Sequence record: OM456492.1
Reading direction: 5' to 3' (one strand)
Length of the DNA stretch: 64,000 nucleotides
Part shown: positions 23,501-32,295 of the stretch, one piece after another
How the letters are laid out: every line of letters starts with the position of its first letter
Numbering within the stretch: position 1 is the stretch's first letter
Translations under genes and position numbers: made by a program
Notes under the pieces: generated by a model
The model's input: the letters and a program-made list of their open reading frames with translations, nothing else
Told to the model about the DNA's origin: nothing
Database searches by the model: none

Positions 23501-24698
23501 GTTGAACGTTCCAAATATCAAAGCATTGATTACCGATGCAGCGAACATGATGGGCGTGCCACCTGCAGTGGCGTTAGCAATGGCTAAGGCGGAGTCTGGA
23601 TTTAACTACACCGCTAAAAACCCGTATGCTTCGGCGTCTGGGTTGTTCCAGTTTGTTAACGGTACGTGGGACGGGATGATGAAGGGGTATTCGCGGAAGT
23701 TCGGTATTCCGCGTGTTAACCAGATGGACCCGTGGGCGAATGCTATATTGGGTGTACAGTTCATTCGTGACAACATCCAACAAGCACAACGTGACCTGGG
23801 TGGTAAAGCACCACCTCCAGCCGTGGCTTATCTGTATCACTTCCTGGGTGCAGGCGGCGGTAAGAAATTCCTGGAAGCATGGAAGCGTAATCCGAATATG
23901 GCGGCATCAAGTGCTCCTGGGATTACATCTGCAATACTGAGAGGGAATGCCAACGTCTTCTACAGCAACGGTCGTATACGTAGCGTGGATGGGGTTATTC
24001 AGGAACTGAACCGCCGTATGGGCGCAATTTCCGCCAACGAAGTCGCTGCCGATCCGAGCAAGACGATGGATATGGTTGCAGGATTGTCGCCTAATTCACC
24101 AACCAACCCGGCAGCAGCAATGGGTGCACCGGCCGCTAATGACCCGAGTCTGTCGCCAGCAGATAACCTGCCAGCAGATAATGCTAATCGTCGTGATGAC
24201 GCATTAACGCAGAAAGGGGCCATGGCGGCACAAGATGCAATGGCTACCGCCGCAGGTAATGTAGGACCAGCAGCACCTACACCAACTACAGGTGGTACCG
24301 GAACATCCGATGCCTCAACAACGGCCGAAACCGTAGCGTCGCAAGCTGCAGCAGAAGGATTGTCTGCGACGGATGTTGCTAAAGTGAAAGCAGGCGCGGA
24401 AGCGCAGGTTAACGCAGCAGCACGTCCAGTTGCCGCTCCAACTTCTGATGCTACAGCATCGACGCCGACGCTGAATGGTGACCCGATAGATGTTCAGCAG
24501 CTCAAGGTACTGATTCAGTCTCGCGATTACTTGAAAGAGATTCGTGATATTTTGAAATCAAATCCAAGAGCGGCAAACGACACGCGTGGTGGTAGTATCC
24601 AGCAAGCGGCAAATGTGCCTCCTCCGGGCTCAGCTGCACGTAGGCAGGAAATAACCCAACCGACACCGTCGTTAAACGTAAGTCGGAAAGCAAGCTAA
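17577..24698 (+). CDS. Tape measure protein with C-terminal lytic transglycosylase (phiKZ gp181-like)
   Basis: 2373 aa with Gly/Lys/Arg-rich tracts and a hydrophobic segment. SLT motif AMAKAESGFN...ASGLFQF lies near the C-terminus. Confidence 0.88.
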   Translation: MAKRGKDGFDDIDLDRLDDWDDFGEPPRPKDEKKRSPILSTLNVARKSALSTIWPEGKRDQVILKGMPKPAADAYEGYQSAAAAAKDIYAHTKGELEKTERTLKMQARQLGPTMKKYLPDAVTKRFDKWSKSDQLDYQNYDPNQALMDRELGDVFSGVPKDAEEQRQLQDSMVEDKLRDSIKEMRADAMHQTMIGMAKDINLLTGLSRGVFLNIERKKLELQYRTLFAIQDIVKMKQSEFDRNTPALEAIVKNTALPDYAKEDFSEVRWANVKRQAAEWMNPLRYADGFMDMIRENTKKKISGIFGEGRGLLESVLGMGVEDDFGMSDSSSLTAERRKTNARDKATAWGSGFLAKKLLGPQIEKLQKWTREEMEKNPEVMKRLQKGAFTFGNLSSISNSAIAGETQGPLADLFRVLNELGIVQPLNREKAFLDERNGETLSRSAKFDRKAYLSLVEVIPAWLAEINKSVRRGYGEHADLEYDITSRGFVDRKVVGNRVRKAVANDEQRLRLQNSINSTVDFVDRGKTLSQKDRQHLADYIESRASQGRAFDVEAILKDPMHLHRYMPGSSAERIKEVLQGHSDSLTGGSNELSNELARKISTVQSSITQRQAVIDEAVNIYGERALRDAGIFNYDAKSDTFGVDKDLSDPYTLFNDLAMGKTRSGRALTRDQEIQRKLQNGSALGDYLRRMNQGANGGVDDTSLPPALRGGGKGRGMSPRQLAAVLYGETSTNFVELLSQRNRGEEAPRNNFDGIIEAIRGNNNSDTLQKILEHVRSMDEEGVLLASLAGGAGSGDEEMGPPRPGGGSGGGKRRRIIIGEDGLIRRWGGVLFDTAAGIGGFAKRGVKGAWNKLNQFGGWARGKIAGMGGGEGPGFLTRMRGLISGSVRGGFEAVSSFGKGLLGIRDVYDDHGNVVLQGARLEAGEYYQVIDGKMVQLKTLDDIKLGSDIVDSAGNLILAAADLAAAGKLRYYKGGKIQALTQGLASKIGLGFNKVAKLPKRFLDFLSPKAGSIVGKIKDWLNEIPEGEEKTRLQKAFNRVTSLPGKVLGFAKRGVDRLKDMITDNPLTRWWKGRKDGGGGGFSLFSSTGKKTNHILIRIYKLLNQRLPGEPEDESWTEEMEKGVGGGGSTIGRAVRGAYNRAKSSLSERFGGRWSRTKAFFGRGRDRLRGWFSGFRGRAGDMLDGYRGARHDIATRYEVERRLAGRDDDVAEFYRSHLNAKGGLSGRKVYGDAKEDLETARDAAGRVINKGKNAAKSAGARLFERLDRMIGLQEMSWFNTMRESVSRAGGDDGIIRTMFAKFGKRNKPPEGDEKRDYFNFFKRWREKRKEKKEKAQGSKGKSGGLWDMVKGLPIIGPIVSILGTVGNILGSITKWGVLKPVGLLGKAAWNVGKFAVTRLAAPAVSAVATAASAVVTAVGWPAILIGGAIAAAGYAAYKIATTTYTQYLDKMRLAQYGFRDYDKWSSDDGAKARYLEDALREYVSYAEDGQASLRGLSGKDVQKLAEGFGINVEEKGEMLAFQAFMLQRFIPIYLRWITALKSMPNSIQLADVGDAKKVSKEDMQTLFNKMKMTKDAKAFSSLTDPRKVNQGFFSKAWDVVTFTPKEFLSGEEVMEVQNEVERAIKFRMDDKKARKYGMAPAVEGIKSAGVDEAINKLGQLDNERNKNLAKVEGWEDGTEQVQIQVDWNAVLDQKDMNAMESVRWKTYGFTTIDNATRTLITVFEKNVIKDIDVKTASYKGDWKKAIASMVPDAIGTPKEDRLKRWFFDRFLPVFMTYLVGVKRYLPTADPLNLKLTGGYLYEISLMMSTAYSLKGGIRQSVWEVNINPLGGEANTNPSSIKAELETLKLLSKEADLAVRNMIKAIKNNGKRARWKDRNKNRSSLEVTGEDDEDSNISSGDSLSSDGARASGYIPTGTSGGVPGNLGQVVDAVGGVRNYAAMTTGSSSINLSDVKDGDYKSLAEKYPIEMLGRKGALNVPNIKALITDAANMMGVPPAVALAMAKAESGFNYTAKNPYASASGLFQFVNGTWDGMMKGYSRKFGIPRVNQMDPWANAILGVQFIRDNIQQAQRDLGGKAPPPAVAYLYHFLGAGGGKKFLEAWKRNPNMAASSAPGITSAILRGNANVFYSNGRIRSVDGVIQELNRRMGAISANEVAADPSKTMDMVAGLSPNSPTNPAAAMGAPAANDPSLSPADNLPADNANRRDDALTQKGAMAAQDAMATAAGNVGPAAPTPTTGGTGTSDASTTAETVASQAAAEGLSATDVAKVKAGAEAQVNAAARPVAAPTSDATASTPTLNGDPIDVQQLKVLIQSRDYLKEIRDILKSNPRAANDTRGGSIQQAANVPPPGSAARRQEITQPTPSLNVSRKAS

Positions 24699-24746
24699 TC
24701 GTAGGGGGTGGTAACACCCCCTAATCATCTTACAGAGAGGTTTTAC

Positions 24747-26969
24747 GTGGAAGCAAGACAACTAAAAGATTCAGGATGGGTAACCGGCCTGTTTGGCGGT
24801 ACAACCGCACAGCGCGATGAGCGCTTCCTGGGTTTGCGTCGTTACTCTAACGCGATGCTCTCGTTTGAAGATACCACGATGGGTGGTTCGCAAGCGTTAA
24901 ATGCGCCGCCGCAGTTTACGATGTTTGCTGATCCGAGTTCAACAGGTGCTTTTGCACAACCTGATGCAGGTCGTGGCTCGTACTCAAAGTACGTTAAAGG
25001 CCAAGACCAACGTGGTTCCTATCGTTTAGGGACTTTCTACTACGAAGCTATTAACCAAAACAGTTTTTATCTTCATTGTCGTTTCGGTAAACCTCGATAT
25101 ATCGGGGTCGCTGCATTCTTCGCGAATATGTACGATTCCAACCTAGCGTATCTGGCACGCACAGGTGACTACCCAGGTATGTTACGCGCGATGGGGACGT
25201 ATGTTGCCGCCGCAGCAATATGGGCCGCAGTAGGTACGGTTGCTTTTGCGGTTATTCTGATTACGCCACGTATGTTGAAGATGGTGCTGAATAAGCAGAC
25301 TTCTCGCTACTACTACGTGAAACCGACAATGCACTTGTATCTGCGCGCTGTGCAGAATATGGTCAACACACAGTTAGTTTATCGCCGATTGGTACCAACG
25401 GGTGTGTTAGGGACTTTCCAGCTTGCTAATGCTGTAGATGGGTCTGAGAAAGGCGGTACCGCCAATAAATACAACGGTGACCGCAAAGAGTGGTACTCGA
25501 TGCTGCCGGAAATCTGGACAGCTGACGGTGAGTTCGATATCTATCGAATGATTAACCGCTACCAAACATTAGCCAACTACCAGGCGAAAACCATCGATAA
25601 AATTCGTAAAGAGTCGAGCAACGAAGAGGACATGGCTCGTCGTTTGCGAAACTTCTATCTGGAAGCGACGTACTCAACAACCCATTTGGAGAAAGCTGCG
25701 CAGTACGAGGTTTCTTTACGTAACCTTGAATACGTAGCCAAAGCTGGTAAAGGGTACGATGCCGGTTTTGAAAACGTCGATAACAAAGAAGACGAACTGG
25801 TAGCAGGGATGAATGGAAGCTTTCAGGATGCTCAGTCACAAGGAGGTAAAGCTGAAAACTTCGAAAACGAAGGTGATGTGCAACGTAAAGAGCTTGCCGA
25901 TCGCATGGCGCAGGTTGAAAAGAACCAGGCTCAAGTTGCCAAGAGTCAGACTGAGGCAAACTCGATGGACGAGAACAATCTCGACATTGGGAAAATTGAA
26001 AACTGGATGGACCAAGGCCAGAAAGAATCTGTCGGTAGCGTCTTTAAAGACTATATCGATATTTTAGATGGTGCTATGGATGGCCTAACTTCGAACATCG
26101 CTTCGGAGATACGTAATGGTTCGCAATGGATTACTTGGCGTGTTGATGGGCGTGACACCGTAGGGCGTTCGTTCTCCAACACCACCAAAGAACCTGAAAT
26201 CTCTGGCACGGTTAACTCCGCCACGCAGAAAGCACGTTCTTTGGAAGTAAACCTCTCCGGTGGTAAGACTGGTTTCGACGCAGTCGATGGTCTCATTACT
26301 GGGTTGAAGTCCGCCTTTACAGGCGCACTCGATTTCTTGCATTTATCAGGGATTATGTCACTGTACAACTCGTCGGTGATTGACTTCCCGGAAGTGTGGG
26401 ACTCCTCAGACACCTCAGGTGACGATATCTCGCTAAGTATTCCCCTTCGTTGTTGGTCGGGTAACGACTTAGATGTGTTTCAGGATCTGATTGTCCCGTT
26501 GTCGTTCTGGTTAGCGGCAGTTTGTCCGCTAGCAACCGGTAAACAATCGTTTACACACCCGTTCTATCTGGAATGTTATTCTCGCGGTCGTTATTCCATG
26601 CGTAATGCCATGGTAACTAACCTGAGTCTCCAGTTCGGTACAGGTGGTTTAGGTTGGCGTGCGGACGGTCTGCCGTTGTCGTGTGATATACAGGTAACTA
26701 TTCGTGACCTGTCGCGCGTCATGTACATGCCGATTGTAACTGATATTGGTGTGTTTGATGATGATAACAAGTTCAGTGAATTTATGTCTGTGTTGGGCGC
26801 TGCCACGCTTTACGAGCGTACCAACGGTATCGCGCAGGCTAAAATCAATGCGTCTATCTGGGCGCAGAACTGGGCAAGTGCCTGGTCGCAGGGTAGCATC
26901 GTCAACGCCGCCTTAGATATCATACCGGCCCGACAAATCGCGAACATTTTCCTACCACAAGCGCGTTAA
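24747..26969 (+). CDS. Tail/baseplate structural protein (phiKZ gp182-like)
   Basis: Follows the tape measure. GTG start chosen after an AGAGG RBS (track start 24708). C-terminal beta-rich CDIQVTIRDL motif. Confidence 0.65.
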   Translation: MEARQLKDSGWVTGLFGGTTAQRDERFLGLRRYSNAMLSFEDTTMGGSQALNAPPQFTMFADPSSTGAFAQPDAGRGSYSKYVKGQDQRGSYRLGTFYYEAINQNSFYLHCRFGKPRYIGVAAFFANMYDSNLAYLARTGDYPGMLRAMGTYVAAAAIWAAVGTVAFAVILITPRMLKMVLNKQTSRYYYVKPTMHLYLRAVQNMVNTQLVYRRLVPTGVLGTFQLANAVDGSEKGGTANKYNGDRKEWYSMLPEIWTADGEFDIYRMINRYQTLANYQAKTIDKIRKESSNEEDMARRLRNFYLEATYSTTHLEKAAQYEVSLRNLEYVAKAGKGYDAGFENVDNKEDELVAGMNGSFQDAQSQGGKAENFENEGDVQRKELADRMAQVEKNQAQVAKSQTEANSMDENNLDIGKIENWMDQGQKESVGSVFKDYIDILDGAMDGLTSNIASEIRNGSQWITWRVDGRDTVGRSFSNTTKEPEISGTVNSATQKARSLEVNLSGGKTGFDAVDGLITGLKSAFTGALDFLHLSGIMSLYNSSVIDFPEVWDSSDTSGDDISLSIPLRCWSGNDLDVFQDLIVPLSFWLAAVCPLATGKQSFTHPFYLECYSRGRYSMRNAMVTNLSLQFGTGGLGWRADGLPLSCDIQVTIRDLSRVMYMPIVTDIGVFDDDNKFSEFMSVLGAATLYERTNGIAQAKINASIWAQNWASAWSQGSIVNAALDIIPARQIANIFLPQAR

Positions 26970-26991: not shown

Positions 26992-27543
26992 ATGAGTTTA
27001 TTTGGAAAGACCGCAAAAGAGCTGGTTTACGATCTCATCGTGTCTCAGAATCCTGGACTGACTGGTAAGGGCGTGACCATCGATAAATTGTCGTTCGGTA
27101 ACCCGGCACACATCACCGCAGCCGATCCTGACCCAGAGCAATACACCAGACTGAACACCAACCTTGATGTTTCTGGTATCATTGAGAAGGGTACGTTCGG
27201 TAAGATGGGTCTTACTTATCGACGATTGGACGTAGCACATTTGTTTGAGAACGTCGTGTTGTCTGTCGATGGCACCGGCGTGTCGACCGCTGCCGATCTT
27301 GTTCCCTTGCTGCGAACCAAATACAATTGGTTAATCGACGCAACCGAGATTTACGCGACAGAATCAATGACTTCCCCCACGAAACACAATCTGCGTTTCA
27401 ATGGAAAGTCGCTGGCGTGGACAGGTACGGTTGAGGTTTATTTGACCGAAGTTCCGAGCGATGGTGTCGATATCAGTAAACTGATTACCGTTACTGAGTT
27501 GAACGGTTTGGTTTATGACGTTTCCGACATGGCTCAAGCGTAA
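26992..27543 (+). CDS. Virion structural protein (baseplate/fibre-attachment type module)
   Basis: 183 aa with GAGG RBS. LTYRRLDVAHLF and SLAWTGTV motifs are typical of jumbo-phage virion modules. Confidence 0.6.
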   Translation: MSLFGKTAKELVYDLIVSQNPGLTGKGVTIDKLSFGNPAHITAADPDPEQYTRLNTNLDVSGIIEKGTFGKMGLTYRRLDVAHLFENVVLSVDGTGVSTAADLVPLLRTKYNWLIDATEIYATESMTSPTKHNLRFNGKSLAWTGTVEVYLTEVPSDGVDISKLITVTELNGLVYDVSDMAQA

Positions 27544-27600
27544 CAAAAAAATAAGTAATGCGAGTACCCCTAACGGGGTACTCGTTTGCTTTTATTTTTA
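27543..27600. terminator. Bidirectional intrinsic terminator
   Basis: CGAGTACCCC-taac-GGGGTACTCG with flanking A and T runs between convergent genes. Confidence 0.85.
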
Positions 27601-28020
27601 GCGTTCGATAATCACTTTTACGATATCTTCTACCGGAGGGTAATACCACAACACCACACTGTTTCGTCCCAAGTCTTTTGGAAACGTTTGACAGTACGCA
27701 ATGTCGGTGCCGAAGCGTTCAGAGAGCTTTAAAACGTTCTCTGGGAACTGACAACCGCCACGCCAATCGCGCGTATAGAGTACCTGCTGTAATAACATCA
27801 CATTAGCATCGAAGAAGTACAAATTTTCTACCGGCGCAATGTGAGGTACCGGAATTGGTGTGTCGGTAAGTACGAACTCCAAACCACCGCATTGTTCTGA
27901 ACGCTCCGCTAGGAATTTCAGATGCCATGGCATTAGACCGTGGTCTTCCCAGACGATATTGTTGACCAGTAAACGATCAGCGTATTCGTCGTAATCAACC
28001 GTGAACAGTTTCTTCGCCAT
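27598..28020 (-). CDS. Hypothetical protein
   Basis: Start set at MAKKLF after a GAGG RBS. Overlaps the end of the MazG-like gene. Confidence 0.65.
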   Translation of the reverse strand: MAKKLFTVDYDEYADRLLVNNIVWEDHGLMPWHLKFLAERSEQCGGLEFVLTDTPIPVPHIAPVENLYFFDANVMLLQQVLYTRDWRGGCQFPENVLKLSERFGTDIAYCQTFPKDLGRNSVVLWYYPPVEDIVKVIIER

Positions 28021-28936
28021 CGGTAAACGCCTCATCTTTTACAGTAAGGGAACCGTTTACTTCGATTTCAGCAGCAGTCATGTCTGCTTCTTTAACGAAG
28101 ATACCGTCCGCGTTCAGGAAACCCTTACGGTCTTTGATTTCATCCCATGCCAGAGAGAAGCACTGTTCCAGAGTCATATCGTACGCATTAGCCAGCGCAT
28201 TGGCGTATTCGACCATCTGAGCGAAGTGACATTCGATCATTACCGCGTCGCTGTTTTCGAAGTGTTTATATTCGAGTTGCTTAGCTGAGTCGATGCCTGC
28301 CTGATCCCAGATATAATCAACCGCACAAGTAAGATGGAAACGCATTTTGTGGAACAGGTAATGACTGTTCCCGGCGTGTGGTTTCTTTGAACGTGCGTCG
28401 TTGACGTATGTGGTGATATCGGTTGAGTCAAACTTAATGAGTTCCATCAAGTTAACCAACACGACCAGAGCATCACCGATACCGTCCATGATGTAACGAC
28501 GTTTGTTTTTACTGATACCGGTTGCCGCTTCACCGTCTTCTTCGTAGAGTTTGGTGGCTTGGCTATACCAGACGCCGTTATCCAGAATACCACGCGCTTT
28601 AGACCAACCCATAACGTTAGTAATACATTGTGGGATGGTGTACAAAGGTACGTAACGCGGACGATCAACCGTACCACGATACTCGACACCTTCCAACGTC
28701 CACGGCATTTCGAAATCATTTATTTCCAAACTCTGGTCGCCTGTGAAGACTTTACCTTCGACGTAAGTGTGACCGGTTTCACTGTTCACGCACAGGGTGT
28801 ACAGTTTCTCAAAGGACCACGGTTCAACAAACTGACGTTGGCAGAATCCAGCCAGAAGCTCATTAATCTGTGCCAGGTACTGGTTAGGTTCAACAATAAC
28901 GTTATACGGAATCTGGATAATGAAACGGTCGCCCAT
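27995..28936 (-). CDS. MazG-like nucleotide pyrophosphohydrolase with extra N-terminal domain
   Basis: W..ARG...Q..KLYEEDGEAA...IMDGIGDALVVL and C..LAWDEIKDRKG match the phage MazG-like family. Confidence 0.85.
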   Translation of the reverse strand: MGDRFIIQIPYNVIVEPNQYLAQINELLAGFCQRQFVEPWSFEKLYTLCVNSETGHTYVEGKVFTGDQSLEINDFEMPWTLEGVEYRGTVDRPRYVPLYTIPQCITNVMGWSKARGILDNGVWYSQATKLYEEDGEAATGISKNKRRYIMDGIGDALVVLVNLMELIKFDSTDITTYVNDARSKKPHAGNSHYLFHKMRFHLTCAVDYIWDQAGIDSAKQLEYKHFENSDAVMIECHFAQMVEYANALANAYDMTLEQCFSLAWDEIKDRKGFLNADGIFVKEADMTAAEIEVNGSLTVKDEAFTDGEETVHG

Positions 28937-28951
28937 TTTGATAGCTCCTTA

Positions 28952-28991
28952 AACAAAAAAAATAAGTAGGGTGTCCATATGGACACCCTAA
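28952..28991 (-). terminator. Intrinsic terminator
   Basis: TAGGGTGTCC-atat-GGACACCCTA plus a T-run on the minus strand. Confidence 0.8.
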
Positions 28992-28999
28992 TACGTATT

Positions 29000-29188
29000 T
29001 TAAATCTTGCACGCACCACCGGTGCAGTTGTCGTCGTCTTTCGACGGGTCAACGCCACCTTCCACACCTGCGTCCGGGTCAAGTCCAGGGATAACCATCT
29101 CGTCATCCGGAGACATGTTTACATCCACACCTAACCCATCACGATACATGAACGTTGTGGCTTGCCCACGACCGAGTTCTCCAGCCAT
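29000..29188 (-). CDS. Small protein resembling the class Ia RNR alpha-subunit C-terminal redox tail
   Basis: 62 aa with AGAGG RBS and its own terminator. Ends DPSKDDDNCTGGACKI, versus the recalled E. coli NrdA end VPSIQDDGCESGACKI. Confidence 0.75.
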   Translation of the reverse strand: MAGELGRGQATTFMYRDGLGVDVNMSPDDEMVIPGLDPDAGVEGGVDPSKDDDNCTGGACKI

Positions 29189-29200
29189 ATTTTCCTCTAC

Positions 29201-29680
29201 TTAATTAATCAGGTGTATCACAACGTCTGGCGTTACTACGTCGACCAGACTGCGATAGATTTTATCGTAACTGAACTTGTTGAAGAAGAAACCCGCTTCG
29301 TCGACAATAACCAAGCCGAATTTCTCGTAGCCGGATATACCAGCACCCGTCGCGTGTTTCCAACCCTCAGGCAAGTAGTTACAGTGCACGGTCAGCCAAC
29401 CGTTCCCAGCGGCTTTTTCATGGAATTTCTCCACCACTTCGCTCCGTAACGCTTCGTTGTGAACCAGATACAGAACGCTGCCGTGGAACTTTGCTGACAT
29501 ATCAACAGCGTGTGTTGTAACGCCTTTCTGACGACCAGCACCATAGCGGATAGTGCGGAACTCGCTCAGTGCAATATGCGGTAAAAAGCCACAGCTACGG
29601 GCTTCATCGGAGTCCAGTTCGATAAGACCTTTGGACAGTTCTTTTACTACGGCACGATAATCGATCCGAGTTATAGACAT
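29201..29680 (-). CDS. Degenerate P-loop NTPase-like protein
   Basis: GAGRQKGVTT (Walker A-like, Lys replaced by Val) and LVIVDEAGFF (Walker B). Confidence 0.5.
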   Translation of the reverse strand: MSITRIDYRAVVKELSKGLIELDSDEARSCGFLPHIALSEFRTIRYGAGRQKGVTTHAVDMSAKFHGSVLYLVHNEALRSEVVEKFHEKAAGNGWLTVHCNYLPEGWKHATGAGISGYEKFGLVIVDEAGFFFNKFSYDKIYRSLVDVVTPDVVIHLIN

Positions 29681-29691
29681 CTGTTTTCACC

Positions 29692-30459
29692 TTATTTGTA
29701 GTTAACCATATACGGCGCGCCCTGCTTAGTAAAGCCAACCGTCAGCTTGCTCGCCTCTTTCTTTACCCATGCGGGTAATTCTTCACGGAATGCCGGGTTC
29801 AGGAACCAAATCTGCTCATAGCGCCCGTCAATCTTTTCAACAACACGCTCCCAACCTTCGACGTACGTCAACGAGAACCATTTAAAACGCGCCTGGCGTG
29901 CCCAGTAGTGGTATTCGATGGTTCGACCGACGTGAGTCAAGACATCAATCAGAACTTGGTAGAAGCTCGGCTTTCCGATGACATGGGTATACTCGAAGAT
30001 AACAGACTCTTCGCCAGGGACGAAGTTATCTTCAAAATTCTTCTCCCCTGTTAAAGGTACCATTATCGTGTCGTTGTTGATACACAGCAACCAGTGCTTA
30101 TTCGAAAATATCGGCGTGTCGCCTGAGAAACGAGCCCAGCGATAATTTTCAATCGCGACGCCAACCTGTGGCCGTAGCGTATCGACCACCTTCGCTATCG
30201 CTGCAGGGTCTATCGGCTCATAAACCAGACAAATCGCCTGCGCTTGCTCTCTTTCCTGCTCAGGTTCCGCAGGGCGTGGTCGCCGCCCCAGCATCAAAAT
30301 CCCACTAAGATTAGTTTCCCCAATCTCAATGATTTCTATTTCGCTAGTAGGAAGCTGGCGTTTAGCGTCCTCCATGTCGACGGCCCCTAATAACCCGTAT
30401 TCGTAGTCGTCGAATTCCACCGTGTAGAATTCATCGGAGAACGCAAAGAGTTTCATCAT
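29692..30459 (-). CDS. Hypothetical protein
   Basis: Start moved to MMKLF after a GGAG RBS. Confidence 0.7.
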   Translation of the reverse strand: MMKLFAFSDEFYTVEFDDYEYGLLGAVDMEDAKRQLPTSEIEIIEIGETNLSGILMLGRRPRPAEPEQEREQAQAICLVYEPIDPAAIAKVVDTLRPQVGVAIENYRWARFSGDTPIFSNKHWLLCINNDTIMVPLTGEKNFEDNFVPGEESVIFEYTHVIGKPSFYQVLIDVLTHVGRTIEYHYWARQARFKWFSLTYVEGWERVVEKIDGRYEQIWFLNPAFREELPAWVKKEASKLTVGFTKQGAPYMVNYK

Positions 30460-30460
30460 C

Positions 30461-30712
30461 TTATTTCTCCATTGTTTTAAAGAGAACATCTACGCTGTTA
30501 CGGAGCATATTCAGTTCTTCTTCTTTCTTACGCAGCAGCATTTCAGGAGCGTTCTTTGCAAACTCTTTCAGTGCCATTTGGACGACATGCGAATCGGTTT
30601 CGTCCGGGAACAGAGCCTTTAATGCGACCCATTCCTCCGCGGTGAATACGTCGCCTTTGCGGACATTACGCTGTTGTGGCAGTCGAATTGTTTTACTGAG
30701 ACGGTCTGTCAT
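30461..30712 (-). CDS. Small hypothetical protein, possible ribbon-helix-helix fold
   Basis: MTDRLSKTIRLP... starts by ATGA overlap with the upstream stop. Confidence 0.55.
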   Translation of the reverse strand: MTDRLSKTIRLPQQRNVRKGDVFTAEEWVALKALFPDETDSHVVQMALKEFAKNAPEMLLRKKEEELNMLRNSVDVLFKTMEK

Positions 30713-31245
30713 AACTCCACCCAAATCAGTTTAAAGGTATTACCTTCTAAGCCAGTAGGATGGATAATCATCGCTTCGGTATAGATAGGCTCTTCTTCCG
30801 CAATACGGTGCTCAGCTGCTAAGCCTGAAAGGTGCATGTAGAGGTCTTCATCCATATCCCCGTTAAAAGACGAAGTCAGGATAAAGGGTGTGGACTCAGC
30901 GATTTGCAAAAGCGTTTCTTTGCTAATCTGTATTTCCATTGTCCGACGCCGTTCCATCCAGCTACCTTGCTCGTGGATATATGGGTCGGTATTAATGCGA
31001 ACGACAGGTTCCGTAGACACACCCAGACCACGCGACATCATCTGGATAGCCAGAAGCGTCCACCATTCTTGTTCGGATATCGGGAAACCGATAGCCTTCA
31101 TTGTACCGTCCGGTTGTGGAACGTGTAATTGTCCACGATGTTCGTCTGGAAACTCGATGATCTTCTGTCCGTTGATAGGAATAAACGGCGATTCGTCCGT
31201 AGCAACCACCGCTTTAGGCTTGAAGGGAACGATGTTGTCAACCAT
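30709..31245 (-). CDS. Hypothetical protein
   Basis: 178 aa, AGGAG RBS. Confidence 0.7.
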   Translation of the reverse strand: MVDNIVPFKPKAVVATDESPFIPINGQKIIEFPDEHRGQLHVPQPDGTMKAIGFPISEQEWWTLLAIQMMSRGLGVSTEPVVRINTDPYIHEQGSWMERRRTMEIQISKETLLQIAESTPFILTSSFNGDMDEDLYMHLSGLAAEHRIAEEEPIYTEAMIIHPTGLEGNTFKLIWVEL

Positions 31246-31257
31246 AAACGCTCCTAA

Positions 31258-32295
31258 TTAGATAGCCACCGGTGCAGATATTTTTTCATGGGACTGATAC
31301 CCGACGATTTCGAAATCTTCGAATTTGTAATCGAAGATAGAATCCGGTTTACGCTTGATGACCAGTTTCGGCAAAGGTAAGGGTTCACGAGTCAGCTGCA
31401 GCTTGGCCTGCTCCAGATGGTTGGAGTATAAATGCACATCGCCACCACTCCAAACGAAATCGCCCGGCAACATGTTAACTTGCTGTGCTACCATGTGAAT
31501 CAGTAACGCGTAAGACGCGATGTTAAACGGCACGCCCAGGAACATATCTGCGCTGCGCTGGTACAGTTGACATGAAAGAACGCGGCGAGGTATTTCAAGT
31601 GCGTCCATCTCAACGTGGAACACTGCGTCATCTGCTACAGCTTCATTACTAAAGCGGGAATCGTTAAATTGATCTGGAAGGTTCTTTTCAAACCAATCAA
31701 GACGCTCGTCGATAGACAGCTCACGAGTGTAGAACTGAAAGAACGCATGACACGGAGCTAACGCCATTTGATCCAACTCACCCACGTTCCATGCGCTGAC
31801 AATAATACGGCGACTGTCAGGATCGTTACGCAGCTGGTCAATCACCTTAGAGATCTGGTCGTGCTCTTTCAGAAGTACACGCGCATCGAACATTTGTGAA
31901 CCGTCGTCCGCGTCGCCATAATCCGCGTATCCAGCAGCTTGCAGTTTCTCGAGTAAAGCTGCATTTTTCTTAGGCACCAGTTTCACATCTTTCCAACGTC
32001 TCCATTGTGCACCATACAGGGGTCCAAGGTTCCCATTCTCATCTTGCCACTCCCGCCAAATGGTAACGCCGTTATCTTCCAGATATTTGGTGTTGGTATC
32101 CCCACTAAGGAACCACAGCAGTTCATGGATAATAGAACGCAGGTGGAGTTTCTTAGTCGTGACTAACGGGAAACCTTTACGCAAATCAAAACGCATTTGG
32201 CGACCAAAGACGGAGAGCGTCCCTGTTCCAGTACGATCGCCTTTAACATGACCCTCGTCCAGAATGTTCTGCATCATCTCAAGATATTGTTTCAC
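31258..32295 (-). CDS. thyA: Thymidylate synthase
   Basis: [33 protein letters not shown] and [21 protein letters not shown] start after AAAGGA. Confidence 0.97.

What the first reader, a model, noticed from the sequence alone, without database searches (positions are those of the whole stretch)
29000..29188. Stand-alone mimic of the ribonucleotide reductase alpha-subunit redox tail
The 62-aa acidic protein has its own RBS and terminator and ends PSKDDDNCTGGACKI. The recalled E. coli/Salmonella NrdA C-terminus is PSIQDDGCESGACKI, with the same C-x4-C pair, the same terminal GACKI and the same acidic run. Upstream, MYRDG echoes NrdA NTRDG. In class Ia RNR this flexible tail shuttles electrons from thioredoxin or glutaredoxin to the active-site disulfide. 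No nrdA gene is in this window. A free tail could boost host RNR turnover in trans, decoy Trx/Grx, or block RNR. It sits among nucleotide-metabolism genes (MazG, ThyA). I know of no description of such a protein.
Basis: partly seen in the sequence, partly recalled or inferred. Interest (0 to 1): 0.85.

Follow-up and report, generated by a model that had tools for sequence, protein, structure and literature searches.

The report
Free-standing copy of RNR redox tail
A 62-residue acidic protein of a giant Salmonella phage ends in the same two-cysteine tail through which the bacterial enzyme that makes DNA building blocks receives its electrons. It belongs to an undescribed family found in jumbo phages and some bacteria, and it probably plugs into the host's DNA-precursor supply.

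Summary
Window 29000-29188 (-) is a real, selected gene, SPN3US gp234. The window is Salmonella phage SaP7.

**Likeness to NrdA**
- Its last 15 residues align end-to-end with the C-terminus of E. coli NrdA (10/15 identical). The geometry matches: two Cys four residues apart, the second two residues from the C-terminus.
- A profile of 75 relatives finds only class Ia RNR alpha C-termini in the PDB (E 0.005).
- A degenerate DNA pattern for the tail hit 120 bacterial loci. 109 of them are nrdA (102 clear 3' ends, 7 cut or interrupted copies); the rest are small stand-alone ORFs.

**Evidence that it is a functional gene**
- Both cysteines are invariant.
- pN/pS is 0.19-0.26 with synonymous sites near saturation.
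- It is not a decayed nrdA.
- SaP7 and the distant relative CR5 have no detectable RNR, thioredoxin or glutaredoxin.
- The gene sits in thymidylate/dNTP gene clusters in eight phage lineages.

- The family also occurs as orphan chromosomal genes in Neisseria, Moraxella, Rheinheimera and others.
- The tail matches the general proteobacterial NrdA tail, not the host's variant.
- The 'MYRDG' echo is chance.

Function is untested. Most likely it is a free tail that engages the host thioredoxin/glutaredoxin-NrdA electron relay. I found no prior description.

The parts
29000..29188 (-). Gene for the 62-aa acidic protein (stop codon included). It equals SPN3US_0234 / ACQ60_gp032 and belongs to PHROG 38753.
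   Evidence: pN/pS 0.19-0.26. Net charge -9, pI 4.05. AlphaFold2 with 75 sequences gives mean pLDDT 56 and pTM 0.18, with no secondary structure over residues 26-58.
29003..29095 (-). Conserved C-terminal module (residues 32-62). This is the only part shared by all phage relatives; the N-terminal part varies in length and sequence.
   Evidence: Alignments A1 and A2. PHROGs 14561 and 24014 match only this part.
29003..29047 (-). NrdA-type redox tail (residues 48-62): an acidic run, Cys55 (29024-29026), four residues, Cys60 (29009-29011), two residues, then the free C-terminus.
   Evidence: BLASTP to NrdA 747-761. tblastn 29047..29003. PDB profile hits. Pattern scan.
29193..29197 (-). Shine-Dalgarno GAGGA, 4 nt upstream of the ATG. 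The upstream gene stops at 29201-29203, so the two genes are probably co-transcribed.
   Evidence: SD-like sites are present upstream of 5 of 9 homologues examined.
28957..28990 (-). Intrinsic-terminator-like hairpin (10 pairs, 6 G-C, loop of 4) plus T run, starting 10 nt after the stop codon.
29201..29680 (-). Upstream neighbour, 159 aa, PHROG 2586, unknown function. It has Walker-like motifs by eye only. It is conserved next to the tail gene only in Seoulvirus, Erskinevirus and Agricanvirus.
29692..30489 (-). 265-aa protein, PHROG 10453, unknown function. In one 237-kb metagenomic jumbo phage (L140) its homologue carries the tail module fused to its C-terminus.
   Evidence: The single-sequence model was too poor to use.
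31258..32274 (-). Thymidylate synthase ThyA (bounds as annotated in SPN3US). It lies within 0.5-2 kb of the tail gene in six jumbo-phage lineages.
27995..28936 (-). MazG-like nucleotide pyrophosphohydrolase, the next gene downstream.

Best explanation
The gene encodes a short, strongly acidic, disordered protein. Its functional part is its last ~31 residues, and the final 12-15 are a copy of the flexible C-terminal redox tail of class Ia ribonucleotide reductase alpha (NrdA). In NrdA that tail is reduced by thioredoxin or glutaredoxin. It then swings into the active site and re-reduces the catalytic disulfide after each turnover (established; PMC11903788, PMC5704485).

The phage has no RNR, thioredoxin or glutaredoxin of its own, yet it must make several megabases of DNA, and it keeps this gene inside its thymidylate/dNTP module. 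I therefore propose that the protein is made in the infected cell as a free tail. Host Trx1/Grx1 would reduce it as they reduce NrdA's own tail. It would then engage host NrdA, so that it plugs into the host RNR re-reduction relay.

My preferred direction is support: an extra, trans-acting electron shuttle that keeps host NrdAB turning over for phage DNA synthesis.

Shown here: the sequence likeness, its specificity, conservation and selection, the genomic context, and the absence of phage RNR/Trx/Grx.
Inferred: that it is a Trx/Grx substrate, that it reaches the NrdA active site, and the sign of the effect.
For: - End-to-end match to NrdA 747-761 with identical cysteine geometry.
- Family profile against the PDB: only RNR alpha C-termini, E 0.005. 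They include chain 1qfn_B, the 25-residue NrdA tail peptide. By my knowledge, and as cited in PMC5704485, that peptide was solved bound to glutaredoxin 1.
- The tail pattern occurs in bacterial genomes only in nrdA (109 of 120 loci: 102 clear 3' ends plus 7 cut or interrupted copies) and in this small-protein family (11 of 120). No unrelated protein was hit.
- Both Cys, the Gly-Ala before the second Cys and the Lys after it are present in 98-100% of 136 distinct tails.
- pN/pS is 0.19 over the last 12 codons.
- The protein is predicted to be disordered.
- SaP7 and CR5 have no NrdA, NrdB, NrdD, NrdG, TrxA or GrxA homologues and none is annotated.
- Eight phage lineages place the gene beside ThyA, MazG, dCMP deaminase, dNMP kinase, ThyX or dUTPase. 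RNR is the only thiol-dependent step of that pathway (established biochemistry).
- In L140 the tail survives as a C-terminal fusion after loss of the intervening gene, so the tail is the selected unit.
Against: - The likeness covers only 12-15 residues. In the 1.84-billion-protein profile search no NrdA-length protein reached E 0.001.
- The tail does not follow the host's own variant: Ser at the sixth position from the C-terminus in Salmonella and Erwinia NrdA, Gly in the phage.
- Further conserved motifs upstream of the tail have no counterpart in NrdA.
- Homologues exist in bacteria whose NrdA already has the tail. They sit at loci unrelated to nrd genes and share no upstream motif with nrdA. 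This fits a regulator at least as well as a booster.
- NrdA's own tethered tail has a high local concentration, and nothing shows that a free tail can enter the active site.
- No expression data were found.
- Absence of phage redoxins rests on tblastn and annotation only.
Confidence: 0.45

Rival explanations
1. Brake or decoy. The free tail competes with NrdA's own tail and with substrate for the active-site pocket, or soaks up reduced thioredoxin/glutaredoxin. Either would lower host RNR activity or divert host redoxins, by analogy with yeast Sml1.
For: The sequence evidence is the same. In class I RNR the alpha tail and nucleotides compete for the same pocket (PMC11903788, read). Bacteria that already have a tail-bearing NrdA keep a separate copy, which suits a regulator. 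From my own knowledge, Sml1 blocks tail-mediated regeneration of yeast R1.
Against: A phage without any RNR gains little from blocking its only de novo dNTP source. The gene travels with dNTP-producing enzymes. Both cysteines are kept, so it should cycle as a substrate rather than trap the redoxin.
Confidence: 0.2
2. Detachable redox tail for a phage enzyme. The tail serves a phage-encoded protein of the same cluster that forms a catalytic disulfide, such as the PHROG 10453 protein, and relays electrons to it from host redoxins.
For: In L140 the tail is fused in frame to the C-terminus of the PHROG 10453 homologue. The cluster holds several conserved proteins of unknown function.
Against: The fusion is seen in a single metagenomic contig and coincides with loss of the intervening gene, so it may be a tolerated deletion. 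The immediate neighbours differ between genera. The 60-kb phage lineage and the bacterial homologues have no PHROG 10453 relative nearby. No invariant cysteine appears in the six-sequence PHROG 10453 alignment; its only invariant columns are M1 and D124.
Confidence: 0.12
3. Another role, with a convergent or relic tail. Examples are an acidic adaptor within a dNTP-synthesis complex, a metal-binding peptide or a peptide precursor.
For: The extra conserved motifs are not found in NrdA. Acidic and aromatic repeats in the N-terminal halves loosely recall NrdB tails. There are no functional data.
Against: The tail motif is found nowhere else in 120 genomic hits. The exact distance to the C-terminus is kept. 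No maturation enzymes or transporters lie nearby in any context. Two cysteines are too few for a usual metal site.
Confidence: 0.15
4. Spurious ORF, or decayed fragment of a phage nrdA.
For: It is short, has no Pfam or NCBIfam family and no expression data.
Against: There are 18 synonymous against 3 non-synonymous differences to CR5 in 31 codons. The gene has an SD and a terminator. 81 clusters were found at 50% identity. No relative has an adjacent nrdA.
Confidence: 0.02

Closest known systems
C-terminal redox tail of class Ia RNR alpha (E. coli NrdA residues ~737-761, Cys754/Cys759; PDB 1qfn chain B is the isolated tail peptide)
   Same: In both, the last 12-15 residues are an acidic run, then two Cys four residues apart, with the second Cys two residues from the free C-terminus. 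10/15 residues are identical to E. coli. Up to 11 of the last 12 residues match NrdA tails of other proteobacteria when Erwinia-phage members are compared. Both are predicted or known to be disordered.
   Different: It is not attached to any catalytic body. It has further conserved motifs upstream that NrdA lacks. It has Gly where enterobacterial NrdA has Ser at the sixth position from the C-terminus. It is a separate gene family with its own history.
Orphan small acidic proteins of Neisseria, Moraxella, Rheinheimera and Alishewanella (for example 'hypothetical protein NMO_1220'); unnamed, with no Pfam or NCBIfam family
   Same: These are true homologues: 38-64 aa, acidic, with the same tail. 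In the Neisseria/Moraxella type the same motif also lies upstream of the tail.
   Different: They are chromosomal, in housekeeping contexts, and have different N-terminal repeats. Their function is equally unknown.
Sml1 / Spd1 / Hug1 / Dif1 (small disordered RNR regulators of fungi; own knowledge)
   Same: They are small, disordered proteins acting on the RNR large subunit. Sml1 interferes with tail-mediated regeneration of the active site.
   Different: There is no sequence likeness (no Pfam hit). They are not cysteine-pair mimics. They are eukaryotic and all are inhibitors.
Free NrdB (beta) C-terminal peptides as competitive RNR inhibitors (own knowledge)
   Same: The principle is the same: a free copy of a flexible subunit tail acts on the alpha subunit.
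   Different: They copy the beta tail, which binds alpha, not the alpha redox tail. They are synthetic, not natural genes. A test for a beta-tail-like motif in this family was inconclusive.
Phage- or operon-encoded redoxins for RNR (T4 NrdC, NrdH; own knowledge)
   Same: They are accessory proteins that feed electrons to RNR and are carried by phages or nrd operons.
   Different: They are thioredoxin-fold proteins with a CxxC site and they act on the tail. This protein is the tail.

Membership tests
Class Ia ribonucleotide reductase alpha subunit (NrdA) | Catalytic ten-stranded barrel and ATP cone (Pfam PF02867, PF00317, PF03477) | tested here: not met
   The 62-aa protein has no Pfam hit even at E 10. 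True NrdA proteins carry all three domains.
Class Ia ribonucleotide reductase alpha subunit (NrdA) | Flexible acidic C-terminal tail with two Cys four residues apart, the second two residues from the C-terminus | tested here: met
PHROG 38753 / 14561 / 24014 (phage small proteins of unknown function) | Profile match | tested here: met
   E 2e-45 over the full length. The two other PHROGs match residues 26-62 and 33-62 only.
NrdA-tail-like small protein family (defined here, alignment A2) | Size under ~130 aa, acidic, both Cys plus the Gly-Ala-Cys-Lys core at the extreme C-terminus | tested here: met
   Invariant columns in 75 sequences. 81 clusters at E 0.001 or better among 1.84 billion representatives. 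Column shares.
Thioredoxin-fold redoxins (Trx, Grx, NrdH, NrdC) | Thioredoxin fold with a CxxC active site | tested here: not met
   No Pfam or NCBIfam hit. The cysteines are four residues apart at the C-terminus. No confident fold is predicted.
Sml1-type RNR inhibitors | Sequence family membership | tested here: not met
   No Pfam family at E 10.
Sml1-type RNR inhibitors | Binds the RNR large subunit and blocks regeneration | not testable with these tools
   This needs binding or structural data.
Peptide natural-product (RiPP) precursors | Adjacent maturation enzymes or transporter | tested here: not met
   None is present in any phage or bacterial context read.
Substrates of thioredoxin/glutaredoxin | Reversible disulfide reduced by Trx/Grx | not testable with these tools
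   This is inferred only, from identity with the NrdA tail peptide present in PDB 1qfn.

The most novel reading that the evidence does not exclude
Free-standing RNR alpha-tail proteins are a new class of trans-acting components of the ribonucleotide reductase redox relay. Jumbo phages that lack RNR use them to take control of host dNTP synthesis, and some bacteria use them as a so far unknown layer of RNR regulation.
Probability: 0.4. Interest if true: 0.9.

Novelty: new variant of a known kind. Interest (0 to 1): 0.75.

Why it matters
Re-reduction of the active site through the alpha tail is the least understood half of the RNR cycle and a proposed drug target. A natural gene family that consists of little more than that tail has several uses.
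- It would be a ready-made probe of how the tail docks to redoxins and to the active site.
- It would show how giant phages that lack RNR secure DNA precursors.
- It would point to an unrecognised regulator of dNTP supply in bacteria, including Neisseria and Moraxella.
- It gives a name and a testable hypothesis to three PHROGs and about 80 protein clusters that are currently 'hypothetical'.

Tried and rejected
- Single-sequence phmmer of the whole protein and of its last 25 residues against the PDB found nothing. Only profiles found NrdA.
- blastn of the gene against 5,426 E. coli genomes gave no match, so there is no recent DNA capture.
- The profile search of 1.84 billion representatives found only small proteins, no NrdA.
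I replaced it with a degenerate pattern for the last 12 codons.
- Host tracking of the tail was rejected. Salmonella and Erwinia NrdA have Ser where the phage tails have Gly.
- Split-gene idea (a tail-less phage or bacterial NrdA complemented in trans) was rejected. The phages have no NrdA at all, and bacterial NrdA keeps its tail.
- Beta-tail mimicry in the N-terminal halves: a PSSM of 54 NrdB tails scores above shuffles (z 6.2 bacterial type, 2.3 phage type). The absolute scores are mostly negative, so this is not established.
- Shared regulatory motif between small-ORF and nrdA upstream regions: nothing above shuffles.
- Function of the neighbours: PHROG 2586 and PHROG 10453 have no Pfam or PDB relative. 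The single-sequence model of PHROG 10453 had pLDDT 44, so no fold search was run.
- The 280-aa neighbour in the 60-kb phage is unrelated to PHROG 10453.
- Literature: no paper on SPN3US gp234, on the tail motif or on a phage RNR-tail mimic.

Full report
**What the window is.** Bases 27000-32000 are 100% identical to Salmonella phage SaP7 (OM456492.1) and 97% identical to SPN3US. Both are 240-kb jumbo phages of the genus Seoulvirus. The window is the last 64 kb of the SaP7 record. The ORF is annotated as a hypothetical protein in all records: SPN3US_0234 / ACQ60_gp032.

**The observation.**
- A GAGGA lies 4 nt before its ATG and 12 nt after the stop of the upstream gene.
- A 10-bp hairpin with a T run follows the stop.
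- The protein has net charge -9 and pI 4.05.
- With a 75-sequence alignment AlphaFold2 finds no fold: pLDDT 56, pTM 0.18, no secondary structure over residues 26-58. This fits a disordered peptide.

**Is the likeness to NrdA real?** I did not use the recalled letters.
- I fetched E. coli K-12 nrdA by an accession shown in papers.
- BLASTP aligns residues 48-62 of the phage protein with NrdA 747-761, the last residue of each. 10/15 are identical, and both cysteines and the last five residues are in register.
- Single-sequence searches of the PDB were blind, but profiles were not. A 12-sequence profile, and then a 75-sequence profile, return as their only hits above noise 14 distinct RNR alpha chains. 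All are matched from the profile's end to the protein's end, best E 0.005. Among them is 1qfn_B, the 25-residue NrdA tail peptide.
- I then searched one genome for each of 185,579 species with a degenerate DNA pattern for the last 12 codons of the family.
  - 102 are the 3' ends of genes 70-91% identical to E. coli NrdA.
  - 7 more are cut or interrupted nrdA copies.
  - 11 are small stand-alone ORFs.
  - None is anything else.
- So the motif is specific to NrdA and to this family.
- The 'MYRDG' echo is present in 2 of 141 family members and means nothing.

**Is it a gene?**
- tblastn finds it in 72 phage records. These are jumbo phages of Salmonella, Escherichia, Proteus, Erwinia and Cronobacter: Seoulvirus, Erskinevirus, Derbicusvirus, Alexandravirus and the Caitlin/Huxley group.
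- It also occurs in 16 IMG/VR contigs.
- It occurs once more in a 222-kb Enterobacter 'plasmid' that is probably a phage.
- The N-terminal part varies freely in length and sequence. The last ~31 residues are conserved.
- Across ten phages the last 31 codons have pS 0.74 and pN 0.19. The last 12 codons have a ratio of 0.19. Against CR5 there are 18 synonymous and 3 non-synonymous differences.
- Column shares over 136 distinct tails, counted back from the C-terminus:
  - 8th position: Cys 100%
  - 6th: Gly 87-96%
  - 5th: Gly 100%
  - 4th: Ala 98-99%
  - 3rd: Cys 100%
  - 2nd: Lys 99-100%
  - last: Ile 80-91%, otherwise Leu
- That set was selected for the Cys pair. The unselected alignment A2 also has both Cys invariant.

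**Not a decayed nrdA, not a split nrdA.**
- The whole SaP7 genome (plus the window) and the whole genome of the distant relative CR5 contain no homologue of NrdA, NrdB, NrdD, NrdG, TrxA or GrxA by tblastn. None is annotated.
- In both genomes the best 'hit' of NrdA is the tail ORF itself.
- In relatives the ORF is always small.
- Bacteria that have a stand-alone copy still have the tail on their NrdA.

**Context.**
- In Seoulvirus, Erskinevirus, Derbicusvirus, the Caitlin group and two further metagenomic jumbo lineages the gene lies 0.5-2 kb downstream of thymidylate synthase, usually just before a MazG-like gene.
- In Alexandravirus it lies near dCMP deaminase.
- In an unrelated ~60-kb phage lineage a 47-aa member sits between RdgC/deaminase-like genes and dNMP kinase, ThyX and dUTPase.
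- The immediate neighbours differ between genera.
- In one 237-kb contig (L140) the PHROG 2586 gene is missing, and the tail module is fused in frame to the C-terminus of the PHROG 10453 homologue. The tail, not the N-terminal part, is what is kept.

**A wider family.** Profile searches brought in 40-64-aa acidic proteins from bacteria.
- One type is found in Neisseria (including N. meningitidis and N. flavescens) and in Moraxella. It shares with the phage proteins a motif a few residues upstream of the acidic run.
- A second type is found in Rheinheimera, Alishewanella and Chromatiaceae. It has the tail but not that motif.
- These genes are chromosomal, in housekeeping neighbourhoods without nrd genes.
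- Their upstream regions share no motif with nrdA upstream regions.
- No Pfam, NCBIfam or named PHROG covers the family.
- The library of 1.84 billion representatives holds 81 clusters at E 0.001 or better. Nearly all are under 125 aa.

**Relation to the host.** Salmonella and Erwinia NrdA end with Ser at the sixth position from the C-terminus. The phage tails carry Gly there, as do most other gamma- and beta-proteobacterial NrdA. There is no DNA similarity to E. coli. The phage gene is therefore an old family member, not a recent copy of the host's nrdA end.

**Mechanism.**
- Established: in class I RNR the active-site cysteines oxidised in each turnover are re-reduced by the cysteine pair on the flexible alpha tail. 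That pair is in turn reduced by thioredoxin or glutaredoxin. The tail and nucleotides compete for the same pocket (PMC11903788; PMC5704485).
- RNR is the only thiol-dependent step of dNTP synthesis, and the phage has none.
- I infer that the protein is a free tail that host redoxins reduce and that engages host NrdA (confidence about 0.45).
- I favour support of turnover, because a phage without RNR depends on host NrdAB and the gene travels with dNTP-producing enzymes.
- A brake or decoy in the manner of Sml1 is the main rival (0.2). The bacterial homologues fit that reading at least as well.
- A detachable tail for a phage enzyme is suggested only by the L140 fusion (0.12).
- A beta-tail-like second motif in the N-terminal halves was considered. 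NrdB tails of the same taxa look loosely similar, but a PSSM test is inconclusive.

**Novelty.** I found no description of SPN3US gp234, of the motif or of a phage or bacterial free RNR alpha tail. I rate it a new variant of a known kind: the known RNR redox relay with its tail as a separate polypeptide. Interest 0.75.

**Limits.**
- No expression or biochemical data exist.
- The similarity is short.
- Absence of phage redoxins rests on tblastn and annotation.
- Only two tail-bearing phage genomes were scanned in full.

Noticed in passing
L007:6001-6132, L010:6001-6144, L027, L049, L022, L050, L054, L133, L035, L040: Orphan 42-64-aa acidic chromosomal ORFs in Neisseria, Moraxella, Rheinheimera and Alishewanella carry the same NrdA-type tail, although NrdA in those bacteria has its own. 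They have no annotation family and no link to nrd genes.
   Followed up: partly
L140:3026-4093: In a 237-kb IMG/VR jumbo phage the tail module is fused in frame to the C-terminus of a PHROG 10453 protein, and the PHROG 2586 gene is absent. This is a single contig, so a deletion-fusion or an assembly artefact cannot be told apart.
   Followed up: partly
L151:900-7300 and L152: A ~60-kb phage lineage carries a 47-48-aa member of the family inside a cluster of deaminase-like, RdgC, dNMP kinase, ThyX and dUTPase genes.
   Followed up: partly
L140:502-1752: The thymidylate synthase ORF of this contig also matches HNH endonuclease PHROGs in its middle (residues ~112-271). It looks like a homing-endonuclease or intein-type insertion in thyA.
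   Followed up: no
SaP7 record 24130-26365 (L013); CR5_153/154 (L156:34830-36978): Both jumbo phages carry a pair of adjacent radical SAM genes. They showed no similarity to NrdG at E 1 or better.
   Followed up: partly
Salmonella phage SPFM records LR535901, LR535903, LR535905-LR535908, LR535911-LR535913: In nine SPFM records the ORF is recovered only in two or three pieces, and the deposited protein predictions are scrambled. The wider region also aligns in up to 40 pieces. These look like sequencing or assembly errors rather than biology.
   Followed up: no
NZ_CP134650.1:48576-48677 (Enterobacter ludwigii, 222,441 bp, filed as a non-mobilizable plasmid): This is the only 'plasmid' hit of the protein. 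Its size and content suggest a jumbo phage genome or phage-plasmid.
   Followed up: no
P0094, P0113 (metagenomic proteins): The first ~50 residues of an IscU/NifU-like protein are joined to a bacterial-type member of the family. This may be a chimeric gene call.
   Followed up: no
window 29201-29680 (-): The 159-aa upstream neighbour (PHROG 2586) shows Walker-A-like and Walker-B-like stretches by eye but matches no Pfam or PDB family.
   Followed up: partly
L081, L132: Two bacterial loci, a Psychrosphaera genome and a Neisseria MAG, have an nrdA that tblastn recovers in several frames or pieces. These are probably assembly errors or pseudogenes.
   Followed up: no
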